IMG/VR virus record: IMGVR_UViG_3300037116_000299 | Coordinates: 1-64,000 of that record | Length of the DNA stretch: 64,000 bases | Direction: 5' to 3' (one strand) | Shown: positions 5,611-47,079 of the stretch, in pieces | Numbering within the stretch: position 1 is the first letter of the stretch | Layout of the letters: each line of letters starts with the position of its first letter | Program-made: the position numbers and the translations under genes | Notes under the pieces: generated by a model | Database searches by the model: none | What the model saw: the letters and a program-made list of their open reading frames with translations, nothing else | Told to the model about the DNA's origin: nothing

Positions 5611-6263
5611 ATGGGCTCCGCCAAGCCAATCTCCATCGGCAAACAGGCAAGCTCCCGCACACTCGTAGGCGGATATGCCTTGATCGGCGTGAAGATCTCA
5701 TGCTTGCCAAGATGGGCGAAGAGTGACCCTTCCTGACTGTAGGATGACATTTGCGTTAGATCGTCAAAGCGGAAGTCTCGCCGCTGGAACTTGCCCTTGC
5801 CGAGGTAGCCCCATTCGGCAAAGGTGATGGGCTGGCCGTCATGCATGCGCATCGTCAGCGCATCACCATGCACAAGATTCTCCGACAAGACATAGAAAGC
5901 GGCTCGATAGACATCATCGGACTCATCCACATTCAGGTAGTCAGCGAGAACCTCAAGCATCTTCGCGCGGCACTCAGCGATATTATCTGCCAGGATCTCA
6001 ATTCCGTAGGCGCACATCACCGCCAATAAGGCGTAATGCCGCCGCTCAAAGTCGGACTTGCCGAACTTGGCTTCGACGGCGGCCAGCTTGCGCTGGAGTA
6101 CAGGGACAAGGAAGTTTCCACTTCCGAAGGCAGGCTCCAGAAAACGAGAGTCGATGCGCTCGGTCTCGCCCTTCACCAGGTCTAGCATGTTCTCGACCAG
6201 CCACCGAGGCGTAAACACCTCCCCGTGATCGGCAACGCGCCTCTTGGATTTGATCAGACTCAT
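5607..6263 (-). CDS. short methyltransferase-like protein (SAM-binding half, no NPPY)
   Basis: GEVFTP, FLEPAFGSGNFL, YGIEI, VHGDAL; no motif IV; ATGA overlap with the downstream MTase. Confidence 0.8.
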   Translation of the reverse strand: MSLIKSKRRVADHGEVFTPRWLVENMLDLVKGETERIDSRFLEPAFGSGNFLVPVLQRKLAAVEAKFGKSDFERRHYALLAVMCAYGIEILADNIAECRAKMLEVLADYLNVDESDDVYRAAFYVLSENLVHGDALTMRMHDGQPITFAEWGYLGKGKFQRRDFRFDDLTQMSSYSQEGSLFAHLGKHEIFTPIKAYPPTSVRELACLPMEIGLAEPI

Positions 6264-6276
6264 AGGTTGTGGCTTG

Positions 6277-6537
6277 CTATCTCGACCAGCAGCTTGTGGC
6301 GGACTGCGACGATCTCCTTGGCAGACCACATCTTGCATATACATCATAGGATAGCCGACGCCCCGCCCGAGTGCGCGTGCGAGTGGGTACGTGGCAGTCG
6401 TCGAAGGTGAGCATGACGCGGGGCATGATGACAGCATCGGGTTTCTGATTGGGCGCAGGTGGCGGCGAGACCTTACACGCGCAGCAGATTTGACCTGACA
6501 ACCTCATCCGTGTCGTGGATGCTCGCTCCCCGCCCAT
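6277..6537 (-). pseudogene. possibly degraded small Cys-containing protein (MGGERAST..GQICCACK), apparently leaderless
   Basis: ATG lies just downstream of a TATTAT -10 flanked by GCGAA repeats. The N-terminus resembles an acidobacterial hypothetical family I recall; the C-terminus looks degenerate. Confidence 0.35.
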
Positions 6538-6555
6538 AGGCGAATAATAGGCGAA
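6536..6555. promoter_or_regulatory. direct repeat ATAGGCGAA x2 (11-bp period), LexA-box-like, overlapping a minus-strand -10 (TATTAT, 6545-6550)
   Basis: Minus strand reads TTTC-gcctatt-ATTC, matching the period of the GTTC-N7-GTTC box of Acidobacterium/alphaproteobacterial LexA. Confidence 0.55.
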
Positions 6556-6611
6556 ATCGTTGTGGATTTTGAAGATTGTCAGTTTGGCGCAACATCGTTT
6601 GCGATGAGAGC

Positions 6612-7475
6612 ATGGCGGGCATGGACAGACTTTCGTTTCTCGGGTTCTATCGCCGTGTGTTTCGGGATGCGTGGGAAGCGGCAAAGATATGGGTTCGAGA
6701 CAACGTATTCGTGGCGGGCGTCATGGCCACTGTGCCCGCCATCGCGATCTATCTCGCAGATCATAGCCACGCGATCGACTGGCCAGTCATGAGGCTAACG
6801 CTGTGCATGTATGCCGGATTGTTGATTCTGTACTATGCCTTTCATCTCATTAGGGCACCCTGGCTCCTCCACCGCAGTAAAGAAGAGCAATTGATCGCCG
6901 CTGACGACGAGCGGGATAGTTATGCCGCGAAGCTGAGAGAGATTGAGGATGACAAGCCGGAGATTGTCCAAGCGGGAGCAGTTGTCGAGCCTATAGGTTT
7001 CGGAATTCAGGGGTCTATGACGCCGTATTTTACCGCCGAGTTCGTAAAAATGAGGTTCGTCAATAAACCTAAAGGGAATTCGGAACGTGCCATAGCACGC
7101 GCAGTTAGAGCCAAAATCAAGTTCATTGATTCTGATTCGAAGGCACTCTTGCTGGAAATCGATGGTAGATGGGACAGCACCGATCAGCCATCCACGAGGC
7201 AATATGGCACGACTCGGAATGACCTCCTCCCGATGAATTTCGGAATCGAAGAAGCACAACAAATCGACATCGCCTTTTGGGATGCGGGGATACGCAAGTT
7301 TGTTGGGTTCAACAATGACAGCTATAACTTTGCACTGTATGGGTACAAGAAGCCGGGGTATGAGTTATCGGCAGGGCCGATAACCGCTGAGATACGACTG
7401 GTTGGAATCGGGGTGAACAAAACGTTCTCTATGACGTTTGGCACCGACCTCCAGGGCAGAGTAGTGCTCCTTTGA
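6612..7475 (+). CDS. membrane-anchored hypothetical protein (2 N-terminal TM + coiled coil + beta-rich domain)
   Basis: Hydrophobic segments VFVAGVMATVPAIAIYL and LTLCMYAGLLILYYAFHLI; long ORF. Confidence 0.7.
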   Translation: MAGMDRLSFLGFYRRVFRDAWEAAKIWVRDNVFVAGVMATVPAIAIYLADHSHAIDWPVMRLTLCMYAGLLILYYAFHLIRAPWLLHRSKEEQLIAADDERDSYAAKLREIEDDKPEIVQAGAVVEPIGFGIQGSMTPYFTAEFVKMRFVNKPKGNSERAIARAVRAKIKFIDSDSKALLLEIDGRWDSTDQPSTRQYGTTRNDLLPMNFGIEEAQQIDIAFWDAGIRKFVGFNNDSYNFALYGYKKPGYELSAGPITAEIRLVGIGVNKTFSMTFGTDLQGRVVLL

Positions 7476-41259: not shown

Positions 41260-42117
41260 TCAAGCAGACAGCCCAGGAGAACTACTCCCAACAGCGTCAG
41301 CAAACTCAGTAGAATCGGTTTCGAAAGCAAGGTGGTCTCCTTCAAGTGGCTGCATGCGTGTCTGTGCCCGTTCCGCTTCGGCGAGCCGGTCGGGGCGGAA
41401 CTGGAACCTGGTGCCAGGCGCAGGTCCCTGGCGCTGCCACCGCGCCAGACGAGCGCACTGCTGGCGGTAGCGGCGAGGTTGATAACGAATCAGCTCGGAC
41501 ACGTCGTCCGGGTTCTTGGGTTCGGTGAGGACTTCATCCAGATCCTGGCTGAAGAACTTCATGGGGATGGTCTCGCCCCGCAGCAAACTGCGAGAGACAG
41601 ACCGGTTATTCAACAGGGCGATGAACGTCTCGATCTGCTTGCGGTTCTCACCGATCAAGCGCTTGCGTTCGGCACGAAGGGCCGAGACGAAACGCTCCAC
41701 AGGGAACGGCATCTCCAGCAGATCCCACTGCGCATCGATACACGCCAGCTTCAGCTGCTCATCAGTGAGTGTGAGCACGCGCGTGACACGCTTGCCCTGC
41801 GCCTCATCGAAGAACGTGTCCCGCATGTAGCGTGCGCACTGCCAGGTTTCTGGCCGACTTGCCCTACAGCGAAACAAGTATTCGACCGAGAACCAGAATT
41901 CGTCTGCACTGGTTCCGTTCTGGCCCAAGCCAAAGAACAGATAGTTTGAACAGGCGTCCTTCAAAGACTCAGCCAGCATGGTACGCTCGCCGGGAACCCC
42001 GGAGAAGACATCCACCAACTGGCCTCCCAACATAGACGGGCCTTGCAGGTTACATTTGTCCAGGCGCTCATGGCCCCCAAACGGGTTCTTTGCCATCCCG
42101 CCCCTGCCGTTACTCAT
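41260..42117 (-). CDS. hypothetical protein
   Basis: ATGA overlap with the HU-like gene; long ORF. Confidence 0.7.
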   Translation of the reverse strand: MSNGRGGMAKNPFGGHERLDKCNLQGPSMLGGQLVDVFSGVPGERTMLAESLKDACSNYLFFGLGQNGTSADEFWFSVEYLFRCRASRPETWQCARYMRDTFFDEAQGKRVTRVLTLTDEQLKLACIDAQWDLLEMPFPVERFVSALRAERKRLIGENRKQIETFIALLNNRSVSRSLLRGETIPMKFFSQDLDEVLTEPKNPDDVSELIRYQPRRYRQQCARLARWQRQGPAPGTRFQFRPDRLAEAERAQTRMQPLEGDHLAFETDSTEFADAVGSSSPGLSA

Positions 42118-42407
42118 TTGATCTCCAATTCCCGCGGTGTGAAAACAACGCGATAACGCTTGCGATAAATCACTCGGACTCGTCCAAGCCGCCAGCATCG
42201 TTCAGGGGAGCGACTCTGTTTGACCACGGAAAACCGGCCAAATGGCAAGTCGACTACCTCATGTCGCGTCAAAGCTTCCTTGATGGAATCGAAGACAAGA
42301 TTGACGAAACTGTGGGCTTCCTCCCAGGAGAAACCCTTGGAGGCAAGTACCAAAGACAGAGGATGCGTTTTCCCAATCGCATACTTCTTCTTCTTCTTGT
42401 TAGCCAC
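42114..42407 (-). CDS. HU/IHF-like DNA-binding protein
   Basis: GFSWEEAHSFVNLVFDSIKEAL..VDLPFGRFSV..VVFTP. Confidence 0.75.
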   Translation of the reverse strand: MANKKKKKYAIGKTHPLSLVLASKGFSWEEAHSFVNLVFDSIKEALTRHEVVDLPFGRFSVVKQSRSPERCWRLGRVRVIYRKRYRVVFTPRELEIK

Positions 42408-42411
42408 AGGA

Positions 42412-43368
42412 TTAGGCCTTCGCCCAGATGTCGGCTTCAACAACCTGGACACCCCAGTCGTACTTCTCCGGTCCCAGCGCGATCCAGCCTGGGTTGCCGA
42501 GCGTTGGTACGATCCGGTGATAAGCAGCATTCATGCAGTCGGCCATGATCTTCTTGACCGGCGGGATATGATCCTGACGGACGTGCATGACAATCTCGTC
42601 ATGTACGACCAGGAGGAACCTGGCATCGTAGATGAGCGGCGCCGTAAACGACCCGCCACGTACAGCCTTGTAGATCTCCGGCATCGCCATCTTCAGGATG
42701 TCGGCATTGCCGGCCTGAATTGGCATGTTGCCGGCCCACCGCTTGATCTGAGAGAGCAACTCCTCAGCTTCCGGATCCCCGGCGGCTGGCAGTTGGTAGA
42801 ACCGCTTGCGGCCGCGCGGGCTGGCGCTATAACCCAGCTCGATGGCCAGACGGCCCTGGTTGTCCAGCCAGGCCTTGAGAACCTTGAAGGTGCAGAAGAA
42901 CTCCTCGATGAAGTCTTTGGCTTCCTCGACGGTCATACCCGTCATCAGAGCCACCCGAGTGGGGCCTGCCCCGTAGGGAACGCCAAAGGTCACAGTCTTG
43001 ATGCGTGACCGGATCAGGGCGAGTTCGTTGTGGCGGGGATGGCTCTCGGTGCTGCGAGCCTCCTCCATCTCTTCGTAAGTAAACTTGAAGCGGGCGCCAA
43101 ACACCTTCGTTGCATTGAAGGTGTGAACGTCCTGTCCGGAGTTGATGGCGGCGATCAGGATGGGATCTCCCGAAGCGTGCGCCATCAGCTTTACTTCGAT
43201 CTGCGCGTAGTCCGAGGCCAGGATCTTGTAGCCTTCGTCGGCCCGGATTGCCGAGCGCGGGTCGGGGACTGACCACTCCAGGACGTTCGTCTTGAAGTTC
43301 CAGAAATAGGACTTACCTGCAAAGTCCCCGACCTTTTCCCGCTCAACCAACACTGCTGCTTCTGCCAC
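42412..43368 (-). CDS. polA: DNA polymerase A, C-terminal (palm/fingers) subunit of a split enzyme
   Basis: Motif A DYAQIE; motif B RSRIKTVTFGVPYG; GNMPIQAGNAD; motif C VHDEIV. Confidence 0.92.
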   Translation of the reverse strand: MAEAAVLVEREKVGDFAGKSYFWNFKTNVLEWSVPDPRSAIRADEGYKILASDYAQIEVKLMAHASGDPILIAAINSGQDVHTFNATKVFGARFKFTYEEMEEARSTESHPRHNELALIRSRIKTVTFGVPYGAGPTRVALMTGMTVEEAKDFIEEFFCTFKVLKAWLDNQGRLAIELGYSASPRGRKRFYQLPAAGDPEAEELLSQIKRWAGNMPIQAGNADILKMAMPEIYKAVRGGSFTAPLIYDARFLLVVHDEIVMHVRQDHIPPVKKIMADCMNAAYHRIVPTLGNPGWIALGPEKYDWGVQVVEADIWAKA

Positions 43369-43371
43369 GAT

Positions 43372-43803
43372 CTACTCCTGTGGTTCGTCGTCCCCGCGGT
43401 AAAGGCCTTCTTCTCCGCCGTTCTCATCTACCTGGCGTGCCTGTTGTTCCAGGGAAGCCCGTTGAACCTTCATGGCGTTGCGCATGTCACCTTCACTGAA
43501 GGGACATTCAAAGATCAGCTCGCCGCTTTCGCGGTAAGCAGCCCACACGGGCTCGCGCGCGATCGCCGGGAACTGTTCAGCAGCTTCCTGCATCAGGAGG
43601 ATGAAAGAGATCTCGGCATTGGCTGCGTCGATCTGTCGCTTGCGATCGGCAATGGCCGACTTACGGGCAGACGCTACAGCCAGCTCACGCTGGACCTGCA
43701 GTTCTTCGTAGCGCAACTCCAGGGCGGACTTGATCTTGTCGTCTTCGAGTTCAGATAGGCGTAACCGCAGGGGCTTGAACGCCCGACGCTTGGAATCACT
43801 CAT
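43372..43803 (-). CDS. coiled-coil hypothetical protein
   Basis: Lies between the polA halves; heptad pattern. Confidence 0.7.
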   Translation of the reverse strand: MSDSKRRAFKPLRLRLSELEDDKIKSALELRYEELQVQRELAVASARKSAIADRKRQIDAANAEISFILLMQEAAEQFPAIAREPVWAAYRESGELIFECPFSEGDMRNAMKVQRASLEQQARQVDENGGEEGLYRGDDEPQE

Positions 43804-43973
43804 AGTTCTTTCTCCATGTCTTGGTGCAGAGCCTGCACCAGGTTGTTGTCGTACCTATCCGGGGCGTGGTAAGCCCCAAGAGCAGCCACAACGAGGGCCG
43901 CGGTACGATGGTTGAGGGTAAGGACCATGTCCCCTGAAGGGGATTTGCATCCCACATAGTTGGGACTGGTCAT
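43800..43973 (-). CDS. 57-aa hypothetical protein MTSPNYVGCKSPSGDMVLTLNHRTAALVVAALG... (not in ORF track)
   Basis: ATGA overlaps at both ends. Confidence 0.6.
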   Translation of the reverse strand: MTSPNYVGCKSPSGDMVLTLNHRTAALVVAALGAYHAPDRYDNNLVQALHQDMEKEL

Positions 43974-44152
43974 GACGGGCGCACCTGGGTCTCCAGGCGT
44001 TCCGCCACGGCGATTGCAGCGTCATCGTCCGGGGAGAGAATAGCCAGAGCATCGGCGACCAAGTCGGCCGTCTTCTTGTTCATGATGAGAGTGGTTACCT
44101 CTCCCATCTCGACCACGCTCCACTGGAACTTCTTGTGCGATTCCACATTCAT
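43970..44152 (-). CDS. small hypothetical protein
   Basis: ATGA overlaps at both ends. Confidence 0.6.
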   Translation of the reverse strand: MNVESHKKFQWSVVEMGEVTTLIMNKKTADLVADALAILSPDDDAAIAVAERLETQVRPS

Positions 44153-44370
44153 GCGGCTACCTGCTCTCGCAACAGCGGAGCAATCTCGGTGGTCGAGACT
44201 GGGTTCTCCGACGAGCCGTCCCAGACATGGACACGAAGTTTGCCTTCGTAGACCTCGATGTAGATCTGGGAGGGGAAGTTGGGATCCGTATCTGGAGAGT
44301 CCCTGAATCCGCGGACTCCTATCTCCAGACCTTCAGGGCCGGTTCCAAGGGTGTCTAATTCAATGCGCAT
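44149..44370 (-). CDS. small hypothetical protein (IYIEVYEGKLRVHVWD)
   Basis: AAGGAGG SD. Confidence 0.65.
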   Translation of the reverse strand: MRIELDTLGTGPEGLEIGVRGFRDSPDTDPNFPSQIYIEVYEGKLRVHVWDGSSENPVSTTEIAPLLREQVAA

Positions 44371-44372
44371 CG

Positions 44373-45797
44373 TTAGGCAGCCTCCTTGAGCTGCTGGCTT
44401 TCGACGGCCAGGCGTTCTGCACGCATGGCTGCGATCTGTGCTCCGAATGCCGACATGACATGCTCGATCTCTTCGGGCCGGCGCACCGGGGCGTACAGCT
44501 CCTTCGGCTTCGGAAACTGCTGTGCATCAGAGCTGAAGCGTCCGGTCGCGATCGTGGCCTTGTCTTCCCCGCCACTCTTGCGTCCTTCTTCTTCCCCTGA
44601 GCCCAGCTGCTTGAAGCGAGGGTGCCACTTGCCGGTGTGCTGGTTGATCTTGTCGACCATGTTGGTGCCGTAGGTCGAGGTCATCTTGGTGACGTTCGAG
44701 AACTCGGCCATCAGCTTGCACATCTCGCGCTGTTCCGGAGAGAAGTCCTTGCCCTTGACCTTGTTCTTGGTGACGTCCTTGAGGGTGTCGCGGCGAATGT
44801 CATCGAGATTGATATCGATCTCGCGCAAAGCGGCCAGCTTCTCGGCGTTCGACTTGAGGTTGAATACCGAGTCCAGTCCGGGGATCAACGATCCAACCAG
44901 ACTTCCCTGCTGCTTCTTCATCGCCGTGAACAGCTTGAAGATCTTCTCGCCGAGGTCGGACTCATGCTGCGTCCAATACTCGATGATCTGGCGCATGATC
45001 GGCACGCTCAGGTTGACGCCGTGGATCTCCATCTCCGCGGTGGGGAAGATGACATCGAACTCATCCCTGGCAGTGTCCAGAAGCTGCCACTGTTTCAGCA
45101 GCTTAGACTGGTCCTGCATCAGCGGGAACATCAGCACGATATCCCGGGCAGAGTAGTACGCCATGCTGCGCGTCAGCTTCCTCCGCTCGTCATCGAGACC
45201 GATGAACATGTCGCGTACGGCCTTGTTGATCAACCAGTAAGGCTCATGCCGGCGAACGCAGTCCGCCAGGCCTACCTTCATGGCCAGAAGCCCGGCAACC
45301 AGGATCTGTTCGGCGAGCATGGAGCAGTAAACCCGCTGCATGTGGACGCCGTACTTGACCAGGAGCCACTTGAAGTCATAGATCGCGTTGTGCAGCAGGT
45401 GTAGGAACTTGTCCGACTCCAGCCACGCTTTGAACTCGACCACCAGGTCGGGATCGATCAGATAGACCTGGTCCTCGTTGCCGATCTGGAACAACACCAT
45501 CCGGGTATCCGGATTGACCGGGTTCATCGAATAGCCCTTGTCGCCCTTGACGGTGCGGCCGGTGGTCTCGGTGTCGATTCCATGGATCCGGATGCGGTCC
45601 AGGAACTCTTTAATTGGGGCCAGGTCTCCAGTCGAGGTGACCTGGATGACCTGGTTTTGATCCCAGGCCCCAGGTTCCCACGCACTTTGCAGCCAATCCG
45701 GCCGGCCAACGATGCGATAGTTCACTGGAACGTGCATCTCCAGTGGAGTACACACCGGACCACGGGAGTGACCGCTACTGCGTCCTCTAGGTGCCAT
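44373..45797 (-). CDS. polA: DNA polymerase A, N-terminal subunit (3'-5' exonuclease + thumb)
   Basis: Exo I IDTETTG, Exo II HNAIYD, Exo III YSARD; EMEIHGV; FNLKS; TYG; HPRFKQ; ATGRFSS..QQFP. Confidence 0.92.
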   Translation of the reverse strand: MAPRGRSSGHSRGPVCTPLEMHVPVNYRIVGRPDWLQSAWEPGAWDQNQVIQVTSTGDLAPIKEFLDRIRIHGIDTETTGRTVKGDKGYSMNPVNPDTRMVLFQIGNEDQVYLIDPDLVVEFKAWLESDKFLHLLHNAIYDFKWLLVKYGVHMQRVYCSMLAEQILVAGLLAMKVGLADCVRRHEPYWLINKAVRDMFIGLDDERRKLTRSMAYYSARDIVLMFPLMQDQSKLLKQWQLLDTARDEFDVIFPTAEMEIHGVNLSVPIMRQIIEYWTQHESDLGEKIFKLFTAMKKQQGSLVGSLIPGLDSVFNLKSNAEKLAALREIDINLDDIRRDTLKDVTKNKVKGKDFSPEQREMCKLMAEFSNVTKMTSTYGTNMVDKINQHTGKWHPRFKQLGSGEEEGRKSGGEDKATIATGRFSSDAQQFPKPKELYAPVRRPEEIEHVMSAFGAQIAAMRAERLAVESQQLKEAA

Positions 45798-46564
45798 TAC
45801 GCCGCCTTTACTGCCTGGTCCCTGACAAGATACGGGAGAGGCGAACTGACTGTTGGTTCGGAGATGCGACGAAGAACTTCCTCCTCGATCGTCGAGGCAA
45901 GTCCTTCCTTGGTTGAAGATTCGTAGATGTCCAGCACAAAGGTGCGGGGCAGAGGTTTCAGATACTTCAGGTAGGCATTCTGGATCGTCCGCTGAGGCTC
46001 AACGTCGTTCCAGGTCTTGCCGTCCTGCTTGCCGGCCTCGCCGCCGCGCCGGGCATTGGCCCGCGCCAGAGCCCAGGAGATATCTTCCTCACGGTGCATG
46101 CCGCGGGTAGGCGGCGGATAAGGAACGAAGATGTGAGGGCCGCGCGCCACCATCAGAATGGTCAGGTCCGGGATGATGCCAAAGTTCAAGGCATAGGTAT
46201 CCATCGTCCACTCAGGAGCCTTGCGGGCGGCCGCGGCGCCGTACGCAAACTGAGAGTCTGCATACCGGTCGCTGATAACCACCTTGCCTGCTTCAACCGC
46301 ATTGGCGATGTCGCCTGCATTCTGAATGTGGTCAGCCAGAAACAGCATGTCCGCAACGCCAGGATGCATTGCATGGGTCGTAGGGTCCGTAAACAGAAGT
46401 GAACGCACCCCACTGCCGATCAACGAGCCCGACCGCGCATCGCCCGGTTCCTTGGTGTTGACCACGATGTAATCCCGAGCCTGCAGGGTCTGGGTCAGCA
46501 GTCCTACCTGCGTGGACTTGCCTACTCCATCGATGCTTTCGAAGGAAATGAATAAGCCTCTCAA
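45797..46564 (-). CDS. tmk: thymidylate kinase
   Basis: FISFESIDGVGKSTQ, TKEPG, ISDRYADSQFAYG, PDLT. Confidence 0.9.
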   Translation of the reverse strand: MRGLFISFESIDGVGKSTQVGLLTQTLQARDYIVVNTKEPGDARSGSLIGSGVRSLLFTDPTTHAMHPGVADMLFLADHIQNAGDIANAVEAGKVVISDRYADSQFAYGAAAARKAPEWTMDTYALNFGIIPDLTILMVARGPHIFVPYPPPTRGMHREEDISWALARANARRGGEAGKQDGKTWNDVEPQRTIQNAYLKYLKPLPRTFVLDIYESSTKEGLASTIEEEVLRRISEPTVSSPLPYLVRDQAVKAA

Positions 46565-47079
46565 GCGCTCACCTCCGGCTGCTGCTTCTTGATGACCATG
46601 GCCAGATCGGCCGGTGAATAGGTGTCGGGCTTGATGACCTTACCGTCTTCCCGCTTGTGGATGGTGCCATCGGGCCAGACCTTGCTCAGGTTCGAGCGCT
46701 GGACTTCGTCCCAGGCCGGCGGAACATACAGGCCAATCGCATTGGCGGCGCCGTAGGTGACAACCAGGGTGTCGGTGATGGCGTCCGCCATTTCTACCAG
46801 ATCAGGTTCGACAGTCTCATCGATCACGACGTGGGGACCTGCTCCCTTATTCAAGGCTGGAACGTCACAGCCCGCCGCGTGAACGAATTCCAGTGCCTCT
46901 TCAAACATCAGGCGGGCGCGGAGCAGGAGAGTATCCCGGTCGGGGATGCCTGGAAATGGGCGGATCTCCTGGTCGTAAAGCGTCATCAGCACGCCGATGT
47001 CGCCTTGCGGGTTATAGGTGCGAACCGCCGCGATGTTCTTGGCTACTTCGGGGCCATACGTCAAAACTGTCGTGTTCAT
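46561..47079 (-). CDS. MazG-superfamily (DR2231-like) dUTP/NTP pyrophosphohydrolase
   Basis: RLMFEEALE, EMADAITD..V.YG, EVQRSNLSK, REDGKVIKP. Confidence 0.85.
   Translation of the reverse strand: MNTTVLTYGPEVAKNIAAVRTYNPQGDIGVLMTLYDQEIRPFPGIPDRDTLLLRARLMFEEALEFVHAAGCDVPALNKGAGPHVVIDETVEPDLVEMADAITDTLVVTYGAANAIGLYVPPAWDEVQRSNLSKVWPDGTIHKREDGKVIKPDTYSPADLAMVIKKQQPEVSA

What the first reader, a model, noticed from the sequence alone, without database searches (positions are those of the whole stretch)
42412..45797. Intein-free split family A DNA polymerase with four genes between the halves
Seen: the N-gene ends just after ATGRFSS-DAQQFP and adds a ~45-aa helical tail. The C-gene begins with a ~35-aa aromatic/beta extension, then DPRSAIRADEGYKILASDYAQIE. 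Known: in PolA, TGRLSSxxPNLQNIP is followed within a few residues by IRxAFxAxxGxxLxxADYSQIE, so the break is clean with nothing lost. Both halves keep all catalytic motifs and have their own coupled starts. Neither extension shows intein signatures (no C/S start, no HN-C/S/T). The 1-kb gap holds four coupled small ORFs, not a homing nuclease. Inference: a heterodimeric PolA assembled through the novel extensions. Only the N-half carries an AA tail, which could allow regulation.
Basis: partly seen in the sequence, partly recalled or inferred. Interest (0 to 1): 0.75.

Follow-up and report, generated by a model that had tools for sequence, protein, structure and literature searches.

The report
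Three-gene split DNA polymerase in phage
A large temperate phage of peat-soil Acidobacteria encodes its only DNA polymerase as two separate proteins, with no intein or intron. A conserved small acidic protein is always encoded between the two halves. Split phage polymerases are already known, so this is a new variant, not a new kind.

Summary
On the minus strand, a 474-aa gene carries the exonuclease, thumb and TGR..QQFP motif. It is followed by four translationally coupled small ORFs and a 318-aa gene carrying motifs A, B and C. The break falls in the palm loop equivalent to Taq P585-R595.

It is not an artefact, an intron or an intein.
- About 75 N-halves and 185 C-halves in metagenomes are all stand-alone, down to 36-41% identity.
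- The locus occurs in at least 16 peat metagenomes.
- Contigs from an RNA library are colinear across both gene boundaries.
- All catalytic residues are invariant.

It is under purifying selection, has no fold match and carries an acidic C-terminal tail. The other gap ORFs vary, and one relative carries two HNH endonucleases there.

The host is Acidobacteriaceae. The element is a 214-kb provirus with no other detectable polymerase.

Split PolAs are already described (MEP401 breaks about 12 residues away; also S-SBP1 and LUZ24). I therefore call this a new variant. The interesting untested idea is a three-subunit PolA.

The parts
44373..45797 (-). PolA N-half (474 aa): N-terminal region, 3'-5' exonuclease (Exo I D75/E77, Exo II N137/D141, Exo III Y215/D219), thumb, and motifs 1-2.
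   Evidence: Pfam PF01612 residues 91-229 and PF00476 positions 28-132. PHROG_17 positions 658-997. Invariant residues. 75 stand-alone relatives of 430-490 aa.
44511..44549 (-). ATGRFSSDAQQFP (A417-P429), the counterpart of Taq T569-P585 (TGRLSS..NLQNIP). It is the last canonical element before the break.
   Evidence: Invariant T418 G419 R420 S423 D424 Q426 Q427 P429.
44376..44510 (-). 45-aa C-terminal tail of the N-half, with a conserved amphipathic pattern (KELF..V...EEI..V...F...IAA) and ending in -AA.
   Evidence: Alignment. Tail of 24-65 aa (median 37) in the 39 of 72 relatives matched by the motif pattern; 34 of 72 N-halves end in AA. No Cys or Ser follows QQxP: the next residue is K or R in 39 of 39.
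44149..44370 (-). ORF73, a variable gap ORF with no relatives among the loci examined.
43970..44152 (-). ORF60, a member of a ~56-65 aa family found between the N-half and the 143-aa gene in the nearer relatives.
   Evidence: BLASTP to L008_56 at 2e-9 and to L010_65 at 2e-6.
43800..43973 (-). ORF57, a tandem paralogue of ORF60 in the same ~60-aa family.
   Evidence: BLASTP to L010_65 at 3e-8 and to L008_56 at 3e-5.
43372..43803 (-). p143, a conserved 143-aa protein: a 54-residue helix, a beta-hairpin, a second helix and a disordered acidic tail (43375-43422). It lies between the polymerase halves in every relative examined.
   Evidence: BLASTP 4e-16 and 9e-18 to syntenic ORFs. 73 clusters, all stand-alone, 135-170 aa where full-length. 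HMM hits between the halves in all loci. AF2 pLDDT 91.6. No fold match. Net charge of the last 20 residues is negative in 64 of 64. dN/dS 0.07-0.28.
43264..43368 (-). 35-aa N-terminal extension of the C-half (LG...GKxYYWN...W+VP). It is predicted as three beta strands.
   Evidence: G14, W32 and P35 are (nearly) invariant in 80 sequences. AF2 strands at 10-16, 19-24 and 29-32 with pLDDT 85-93. No [HSG]-N-[CST] motif in the first 60 residues in 0 of 80.
42412..43368 (-). PolA C-half (318 aa): motif A (D53, 43195-43212), fingers and motif B (R120 K124 Y132 G133, 42964-43011), and motif C (H256 D257 E258, 42595-42606).
   Evidence: PF00476 positions 142-361, E 1.4e-46. R38 aligns to Taq R595. Invariant catalytic residues in 80 sequences. 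AF2 pLDDT 93.3. VIA Z 25.6 to Bst Pol I residues 623-876.
42114..42530 (-). HU-like DNA-binding gene directly downstream. The mechanical ORF overlaps the 3' end of the C-half; the true start is probably internal. It is syntenic in relatives.
   Evidence: PF00216 at 7.5e-5. An HU gene follows the C-half.
45797..47079 (-). Upstream syntenic genes of the same coupled block: a MazG-like gene (46561-47079) and dTMP kinase (45797-46564).
   Evidence: Pfam. Same gene order.

Best explanation
This is the replicative family A DNA polymerase of a temperate ~214-kb phage of Acidobacteriaceae. It is permanently encoded as two polypeptides that associate non-covalently.

Shown:
- The gene is cut in the palm loop between motif 2 (TGR..QQFP) and the strand before motif A, equivalent to Taq P585-R595.
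- The N-protein supplies the proofreading exonuclease, the thumb and the primer-contacting motifs.
- The C-protein supplies both catalytic carboxylate motifs and the fingers.
- Both proteins, plus a 143-aa protein (p143), are made from one translationally coupled operon.
- The whole clade has this layout, and all three genes are under purifying selection.
- No RNA or protein splicing signal is present.

Inferred:
- The halves re-form a normal PolA fold by fragment complementation.
- The conserved N-tail helix and the C-extension beta unit help this association.
- p143, with its long helix, hairpin and aromatic-containing acidic tail, is a polymerase-associated third component. It could be an assembly clasp or a replisome tether.
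- The split probably began with a mobile-element insertion at this conserved site. One relative still carries two HNH endonuclease genes in the gap, and one of them has detached a copy of the C-extension.
For: Anatomy and clean break.

Clade-wide split: 185 stand-alone C-halves and 75 stand-alone N-halves at 36-100% identity. The next hit is an unsplit 625-aa PolA at 25% identity.

Invariant Exo I-III, TGR and motifs A, B, C.

Fold: the C-half model matches Bst and Taq Pol I at Z ~25.

Not an artefact: synteny holds in 12 independent assemblies. The locus is in at least 16 peat metagenomes, and an independent DNA contig spans 43190-44660.

No intron: no Rfam hit. The gap is fully coding, with ATGA overlaps. 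RNA-library contigs are colinear over both boundaries with no joints.

No intein: no Hint/intein Pfam hit. No C/S after QQxP and no [HSG]-N-[CST] motif in the C-half's first 60 residues.

p143: always present between the halves. 73 stand-alone clusters. dN/dS at or below 0.28 and dN similar to the polymerase halves. Confident orphan fold. Acidic tail in 64 of 64.

Sole polymerase: no PolB or Pol III alpha in the 214-kb record.

Mobile-element link: L004 has two HNH/EndoVII genes in the gap plus a detached copy of the extension, E 2e-12.

Viability precedent: the cultured phages MEP401 and MEP402 break their PolA about 12 residues downstream.
Against: No direct evidence that the halves bind each other or that p143 binds either.

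p143 has no recognisable domain, and its constant position could reflect linkage alone.

In the isolated C-half model, VIA superposes the extension on the segment holding the canonical motif-1/2 hairpin. The N-half must also fill that slot, so the real interface geometry is unknown.

RNA evidence comes from assembled contigs of a metatranscriptome library, which may contain DNA.

dS is saturated, so the dN/dS values are rough.
Confidence: 0.7

Rival explanations
1. Plain two-subunit enzyme. The halves assemble by themselves through native intradomain contacts. p143 and the other gap ORFs are passengers or have unrelated functions, and sit there only because the gap tolerates insertions.
For: MEP401 and MEP402 grow with a PolA broken nearby and an unrelated 77-aa gap ORF. 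The other gap ORFs are clearly variable, with NUDIX, HNH and ORFan genes in relatives. p143 has no domain or fold match.
Against: p143 is between the halves in 12 of 12 contexts across 20-90% identity, while everything else in the gap turns over. Its evolutionary rate resembles that of the polymerase halves. No member of the family is fused to another domain: all 73 clusters are stand-alone, and every context examined lies between polymerase halves.
Confidence: 0.25
2. Protein trans-splicing. The tail and the extension are an atypical split intein that ligates the halves into one chain, as in 'fractured genes'.
For: The layout resembles fractured genes, with two halves and intervening ORFs (PMC2677866).
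Against: No intein or Hint Pfam hit. The residue after QQxP is K or R in 39 of 39, never C, S or A. No [HSG]-N-[CST] motif in the first 60 residues of 0 of 80 C-halves. The tail plus extension total about 80 aa, and the extension folds as part of the palm in the model.
Confidence: 0.02
3. RNA splicing. The 1-kb gap is a group I or II intron carrying ORFs.
For: Phage PolA genes often carry such introns. Lbo-JY46 is broken in motif B with a LAGLIDADG gene. The authors of the MEP401 paper raised this possibility for their phage.
Against: No Rfam match at E<=1. The gap is fully coding with four overlapping or adjacent start-stop junctions. The halves are in different frames, each with its own Shine-Dalgarno. 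RNA-library contigs cross both boundaries unspliced. Gap content differs completely among relatives while the ends stay fixed.
Confidence: 0.02
4. Decay or mis-assembly. The polymerase is a broken pseudogene of a dying prophage, or a chimeric contig.
For: The record is classed as a provirus. In the Acidobacteriaceae MAG L010 the N-half is in four frame pieces, and L005 has an orphan C-half among transposases.
Against: The same break occurs in about 75 and 185 independent proteins, with invariant catalytic residues. dN/dS is well below 1. The locus occurs in at least 16 samples with independent contigs spanning the gap. CheckV completeness is 99%.
Confidence: 0.01

Closest known systems
MEP401/MEP402 (OM43 Methylophilales phages, Zobellviridae): split PolA, ORF13 / ORF14 / ORF15
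   Same: The N-gene holds exo plus PF00476 to position 132 and ends just after TGRLSSSSPNLQNF. A small ORF of unknown function lies between the halves. The C-gene starts at motif A. No intein is present. The phages are cultured and infectious (PMC10580990).
   Different: The break is about 12 residues further downstream, after the IKTLF strand. There is no tail or extension. ORF14 (77 aa) is unrelated to p143, with E 0.009 over 23 residues. These are 43-kb lytic podophages, and their polymerase is only distantly related.
Exo/pol gene fission in S-SBP1-like T7-like cyanophages (Czernecki et al. 2023, PMC10201439)
   Same: Intein-free fission of a phage PolA into two interacting proteins. AlphaFold predicts a preserved fold with free termini.
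   Different: That break lies between the exonuclease and polymerase domains, arose from a recent 1-nt frameshift, and has no intervening genes. Here the catalytic palm itself is cut, the split is ancient, and a conserved gene sits in the gap.
LUZ24-like Bruynoghevirus multi-piece PolA (gp25 exo subunit, gp34 part II, gp36)
   Same: PolA pieces separated by several unrelated genes, including endonucleases, in a viable phage.
   Different: The break points differ: the exo domain is separate, and the last piece holds PF00476 positions 295-381. The pieces are spread over 5 kb.
Intein-less split genes with free-standing homing endonucleases: T4-like gp43 (PolB) and Aeh1 nrdA-mobE
   Same: An essential replication enzyme encoded as two genes in one operon with intervening ORFs, and active as a complex (as summarised in PMC2677866). 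Relative L004 has two HNH genes in the gap.
   Different: Those are different enzyme families. This window has no endonuclease in the gap. No conserved accessory gene has been described there.
PhiKZ split family B polymerase DNAP-N/DNAP-C with Rhc (PMC13648687)
   Same: A jumbo-phage replicative polymerase made of two stably associated polypeptides plus a third accessory protein that boosts activity.
   Different: That is a family B enzyme. Its third protein is an RNase H-clamp fusion. The genes are not arranged as N-accessory-C.

Membership tests
Family A DNA polymerase (PolA) | 3'-5' exonuclease motifs Exo I, II and III | tested here: met
   PF01612 at 1.7e-9. D75/E77, N137/D141 and Y215/D219 are invariant.
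Family A DNA polymerase (PolA) | Polymerase motifs: TGR (motif 2), A (DYSQIE), B (R..K...F/Y..YG) and C (HDE) | tested here: met
   TGR..QQFP is in the N-half. D53, R120/K124/Y132/G133 and H256/D257/E258 are invariant in 80 C-halves.
Family A DNA polymerase (PolA) | Palm-fingers fold | tested here: met
   AF2 C-half model at pLDDT 93. VIA Z 25.6, rmsd 1.8 over 235 residues to Bst Pol I.
Family A DNA polymerase (PolA) | Single polypeptide carrying the exo and whole pol domain (the usual form) | tested here: not met
   Two genes 1 kb apart in different frames. No fused relative down to 36% identity.
Split-intein 'fractured gene' | N-intein starting with C/S/A at the junction; C-intein ending in HN followed by C/S/T; Hint domain | tested here: not met
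   No Pfam intein hit. K or R follows QQxP in 39 of 39. No [HSG]-N-[CST] motif in the first 60 residues in 0 of 80.
Intron-interrupted phage polymerase gene | Structured group I/II intron RNA between exons, and a spliced mRNA | tested here: not met
   No Rfam match. The gap is fully coding. RNA-library contigs are colinear with no joints. This is contig-level evidence only.
Endonuclease-fractured intein-less split gene (Aeh1 nrdA / T4-like gp43 type) | Free-standing homing endonuclease gene between the halves | tested here: not met
   None of the four gap ORFs in the window hits Pfam or PHROGs. Relative L004 does carry two HNH/EndoVII genes there, so the history may be of this type.
Endonuclease-fractured intein-less split gene (Aeh1 nrdA / T4-like gp43 type) | Halves co-expressed from one operon and active as a non-covalent complex | not testable with these tools
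   The coupled operon is shown. Complex formation and activity need biochemistry.
MEP401-type split PolA | Break between motif 2 and motif A, with a small ORF in between | tested here: met
   Both N-genes end at PF00476 position 132. The C-genes start at position 142 here and 154 in MEP401. There is no homology of the gap ORFs and no close relationship, so this is a convergent or parallel case, not the same lineage.

The most novel reading that the evidence does not exclude
The enzyme is an obligate three-subunit PolA. p143 would clasp the two halves, with its long helix pairing with the N-half tail helix and its hairpin pairing with the C-half beta extension. Its aromatic-containing acidic tail would tether the polymerase to another replisome protein or to its own DNA cleft. 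The conserved -AA end of the N-half would act as a degron that removes unassembled, exonuclease-only subunits. This would be the first family A polymerase whose catalytic domain is assembled from separate chains by a dedicated subunit.
Probability: 0.25. Interest if true: 0.7.

Novelty: new variant of a known kind. Interest (0 to 1): 0.45.

Why it matters
PolA is the textbook single-chain polymerase and a workhorse of biotechnology. A natural, ancient cut through its palm shows that the catalytic domain tolerates fission at the motif-2/motif-A loop. This cut is kept across a whole clade of large soil phages.

The locus offers ready-made interface elements (tail, beta extension and possibly p143) for engineering split or conditionally assembled polymerases. 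It also gives a clean system for asking how mobile-element damage to an essential gene becomes fixed as a multi-subunit enzyme. Finally, it adds a replication-module marker for a largely unknown group of jumbo temperate phages of Acidobacteria in peat.

Tried and rejected
- **Close relatives in cultured phages or IMG/VR by the C-half.** None closer than 33% identity was found.
- **Fold assignment for p143.** Foldseek against PDB, AFDB clusters and BFVD, and VIA-wide, gave only generic coiled-coil matches. The ESM Atlas gave only unnamed viral clusters.
- **C-extension as a degenerate duplicate of the N-half motif-1/2 hairpin.** The structural superposition suggested this, but hhalign found no sequence similarity, with probability below 1%. 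I dropped it as a claim and kept it as a structural remark.
- **Stop read-through.** p143 and the C-half are in frame, separated by TAG plus one codon, in the window, L003 and L011. They are not in frame in L009, and the phage has no suppressor tRNA. I treat this as ordinary termination-reinitiation geometry.
- **The AA tail as a unique feature of the N-half.** Rejected, because 23 of 253 ORFs of the phage end in AA. The enrichment in N-halves (34 of 72) remains.
- **Leptolyngbya phage Lbo-JY46 as a same-site split.** Its break is in motif B, with a LAGLIDADG gene.
- **Multimer structure prediction of N + C ± p143.** Not possible with the tools offered.
Full report
**1. What is in the sequence**

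On the minus strand of 42412-45797 lie six tightly packed ORFs.
- A 474-aa gene at 44373-45797.
- Four small ORFs of 73, 60, 57 and 143 aa.
- A 318-aa gene at 42412-43368.

Pfam places PF01612 (3'-5' exonuclease) and PF00476 positions 28-132 in the first gene. It places PF00476 positions 142-361 in the last gene and nothing in the four small ORFs. PHROG_17 matches the first gene up to profile position 997 and the last gene from position 996. The break is therefore clean.

The N-gene ends ATGRFSSDAQQFP (A417-P429) plus a 45-aa tail. The C-gene has 35 extra residues before PDPRSAIRA..DYAQIE.

R38 of the C-half aligns with Taq R595 and D53 with Taq D610. By my own numbering of the Taq sequence, QQFP corresponds to NLQNIP585. 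The cut is thus in the short palm loop between motif 2 and the strand that precedes motif A.

The junctions are an AAGGAGG Shine-Dalgarno plus ATG, three ATGA overlaps, and AGGAG-TAG-ATC-GTG. No promoter-like site lies inside the block.

**2. Context**

The window is the first 64 kb of a 214.3-kb IMG/VR record classed as a provirus, with CheckV completeness of 99%.

The surrounding genes form a replication and nucleotide module. In order, they are ATP-dependent ligase, class II RNR, DUF1828, MazG-like, dTMP kinase, PolA-N, the gap, PolA-C, an HU-like gene, a 312-aa unknown and a 961-aa SNF2 helicase.

The record has a tyrosine integrase next to a tRNA-Arg at its far end, an SSB, eight tRNAs and a permuted tmRNA. 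It has no PolB, Pol III alpha, DnaB_C or beta-clamp Pfam hit. The split PolA is therefore its only detectable polymerase.

Relatives of the C-half lie in a 3.26-Mb contig of an Acidobacteriaceae MAG (76% identity) and in a Terracidiphilus MAG. The locus is held by at least 16 peat and permafrost metagenomes. I conclude this is a temperate jumbo phage of Acidobacteriaceae.

**3. The split is real and ancient**

A search with the C-half returned 185 proteins at E below 1e-10. Apart from a few shorter, probably partial sequences, those listed are about 290-355 aa stand-alone C-halves down to 41% identity. Many sit on 100-260 kb contigs.

A search with the N-half accepted lengths up to 830 aa, so it could have found fused forms. 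It returned 75 stand-alone N-halves of 430-490 aa at 36-100% identity. The next hit was an unsplit 625-aa PolA at 25% identity.

Exo I-III, TGR and motifs A, B and C are invariant. NG86 dN/dS is 0.04-0.19 for both halves, although dS is saturated.

An independent DNA contig spans 43190-44660 with one mismatch. Mis-assembly and pseudogene explanations are excluded.

**4. Not spliced**

*RNA level.* There is no Rfam match at E<=1 in 41-47 kb. The gap is fully coding. The content of the gap differs between relatives while the ends of the halves stay fixed. Contigs from a metatranscriptome library cross both boundaries colinearly (42839-43491 and 44338-44907), and no joint appears in the RNA runs. 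The caveat is that these are contigs, and such libraries can contain DNA.

*Protein level.* There is no intein or Hint hit. The residue after QQxP is K or R in 39 of 39 sequences. None of 80 C-halves has an [HSG]-N-[CST] motif in its first 60 residues.

**5.

I examined twelve contexts: the window, L003, L004, L006-L011, L016-L018 and the P0011 contig. In every one, a 139-157 aa ORF lies between the halves. For eleven of these the DNA was scanned with the family HMM; the P0011 contig was judged from its gene table only.
- BLASTP of the window protein against the syntenic ORFs of L003 and L004 gives 4e-16 and 9e-18.
- A profile search of 1.84 billion representatives finds 73 clusters. All are stand-alone (135-170 aa where full-length) and none is fused to another domain.
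- dN between the window and L008 is 0.24, against 0.20-0.21 for the polymerase halves. dN/dS is 0.07-0.28.

AlphaFold2 gives a confident model with pLDDT 91.6. It has a 54-residue helix (22-75), a short helix, a beta-hairpin (88-99), a helix (104-127) and a disordered tail.

That tail is acidic in 64 of 64 members, with a median net charge of -7 over the last 20 residues. It usually carries one aromatic residue, as in LY, MF or DF. From general knowledge, aromatic-containing acidic tails are how T7 gp2.5, T7 gp4 and bacterial SSB contact their polymerases. This is a lead, not a test.

No structural or sequence relative was found.

The other gap ORFs are variable.
- ORF60 and ORF57 are tandem paralogues of a ~60-aa family seen only in the nearer relatives.
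- ORF73 has no relatives among the loci examined.
- Other relatives carry a NUDIX gene or ORFans.
- L004 carries two HNH/EndoVII endonuclease genes.
- The minimal cassette, in L003 and L011, is N-half, p143, C-half.

**6. The extensions**

The N-tail pattern (KELF..V...EEI..V...F...IAA) and the C-extension pattern (LG...GKxYYWN...W+VP) are conserved.

The AF2 model of the C-half alone has pLDDT 93.3. It folds the extension into three strands at pLDDT 85-93. VIA-align superposes model residues 15-34 on Taq 557-585 and Klenow 652 onward, which is the segment holding the canonical motif-1/2 hairpin.

The N-half carries its own invariant hairpin for that slot. The geometry in the complex is therefore unresolved. 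The extension may augment the sheet beside the N-half hairpin, or it may hold the place until assembly.

hhalign finds no sequence similarity between the extension and the hairpin.

**7. The AA tail**

34 of 72 N-halves end in -AA, and 45 of 72 end in -A. The DNA is GCNGCN followed by a stop that overlaps or abuts the next start codon.

However, 23 of 253 ORFs of this phage (9%) end in AA, against 0.9% expected from its alanine content. These include the dTMP kinase and ORF73 next door.

So the feature is enriched in N-halves but not specific to them. A degron role is speculation.

**8. Origin**

In L004, a 54-aa ORF matches the C-extension profile at E 2e-12 and stops right after WRV. A 197-aa HNH endonuclease gene follows, and then a complete C-half with its own extension. 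The locus is therefore a live target for homing-type endonuclease genes.

This fits the known route to intein-less split genes, as in T4-like gp43 and Aeh1 nrdA-mobE (summarised in PMC2677866).

**9. Comparison with the known**

Split phage polymerases are established.
- PhiKZ PolB, where two stably associated subunits are boosted by a third, transiently binding protein (PMC13648687).
- T4-like gp43.
- The exo/pol fission of S-SBP1-like PolA, reported as the first PolA split (PMC10201439).
- LUZ24, with its PolA in three pieces.

The closest case is the cultured OM43 phages MEP401 and MEP402. Their ORF13 ends ..TGRLSSSSPNLQNF plus 12 residues. ORF15 starts at motif A, and an unrelated 77-aa ORF lies between.

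The break region here is therefore not unprecedented. What is new:
- clade-wide fixation in large temperate Acidobacteria phages;
- the conserved tail and beta extension;
- a conserved orphan protein always encoded between the halves.

**10. Verdict**

This is a genuine, functional, intein- and intron-free split PolA, with high confidence. It is probably a heteromer, and p143 is a plausible third component with moderate to low confidence. I classify it as a new variant of a known kind, with interest 0.45.

Noticed in passing
outside the window: G000:C1:75102-75521 (L019 694-995, minus strand): The phage record encodes a permuted two-piece tmRNA (Rfam RF04321, 68.7 bits against a gathering score of 47). 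ARAGORN predicts a tag ending ..AAYLAAA. A cluster of seven tRNAs lies at 73.7-86.8 kb, and none is a suppressor.
   Followed up: partly
whole record G000 (the window included): 23 of 253 greedily called ORFs (9%) end in Ala-Ala, and 44 end in Ala. Expectation from the 9.4% alanine content is about 0.9% for AA. This is a genome-wide C-terminal AA bias in a phage that carries its own tmRNA. It is unexplained.
   Followed up: partly
window 43800-44152 (-): ORF60 and ORF57 are tandem paralogues of a ~56-65 aa family (..LVMN.R.A.LV.SALE..NPD..). The family lies between the N-half and p143 in the nearer relatives L008, L009 and L010.
   Followed up: partly
L004 3976-6011: This relative's gap holds two HNH/EndoVII-type endonuclease genes: 211 aa on the opposite strand and 197 aa. 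It also holds a 54-aa ORF that is a detached copy of the C-half N-terminal extension (E 2e-12).
   Followed up: yes
L003 2614-3408: The MazG-like (PRA-PH) ORF upstream of the polymerase has a C-terminal ~100 residues that match the C-half HMM at positions 66-168, in the fingers region (E 6e-11). This looks like a partial PolA fragment fused to MazG.
   Followed up: no
L010 3769-5250 (Acidobacteriaceae MAG, 3.26-Mb contig): The N-half is in four frame pieces, while p143 and the C-half are intact. This is either a decaying integrated prophage or indel errors in a long-read assembly.
   Followed up: no
L005 (668-kb contig), 6001-6933: An orphan C-half (47% identity) with no N-half or p143 within 6 kb, surrounded by transposase and integrase genes.
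   Followed up: no
window 43366-43376; L003 5995-6003; L011 5932-5940: p143 and the C-half are in the same reading frame, separated only by TAG plus one codon, in three relatives. They are not in frame in L009.
   Followed up: partly
window 42114-42530 (-): An HU-like (PF00216) gene lies directly after the C-half. Its mechanical ORF overlaps the last ~120 nt of the C-half, and it is syntenic in relatives.
   Followed up: partly
L013 2872-5835 (Leptolyngbya phage Lbo-JY46): The PolA of this cultured cyanophage is broken inside motif B (..KSAGFAIN*). A LAGLIDADG endonuclease gene follows, and the rest of the polymerase lies 1 kb downstream. It is annotated only as 'putative DNA polymerase' plus hypothetical proteins.
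   Followed up: partly
outside the window: G000:C1:210585-211807: A tyrosine integrase lies next to tRNA-Arg(CCG) at the far end of the record. This fits integration at a tRNA gene.
   Followed up: no
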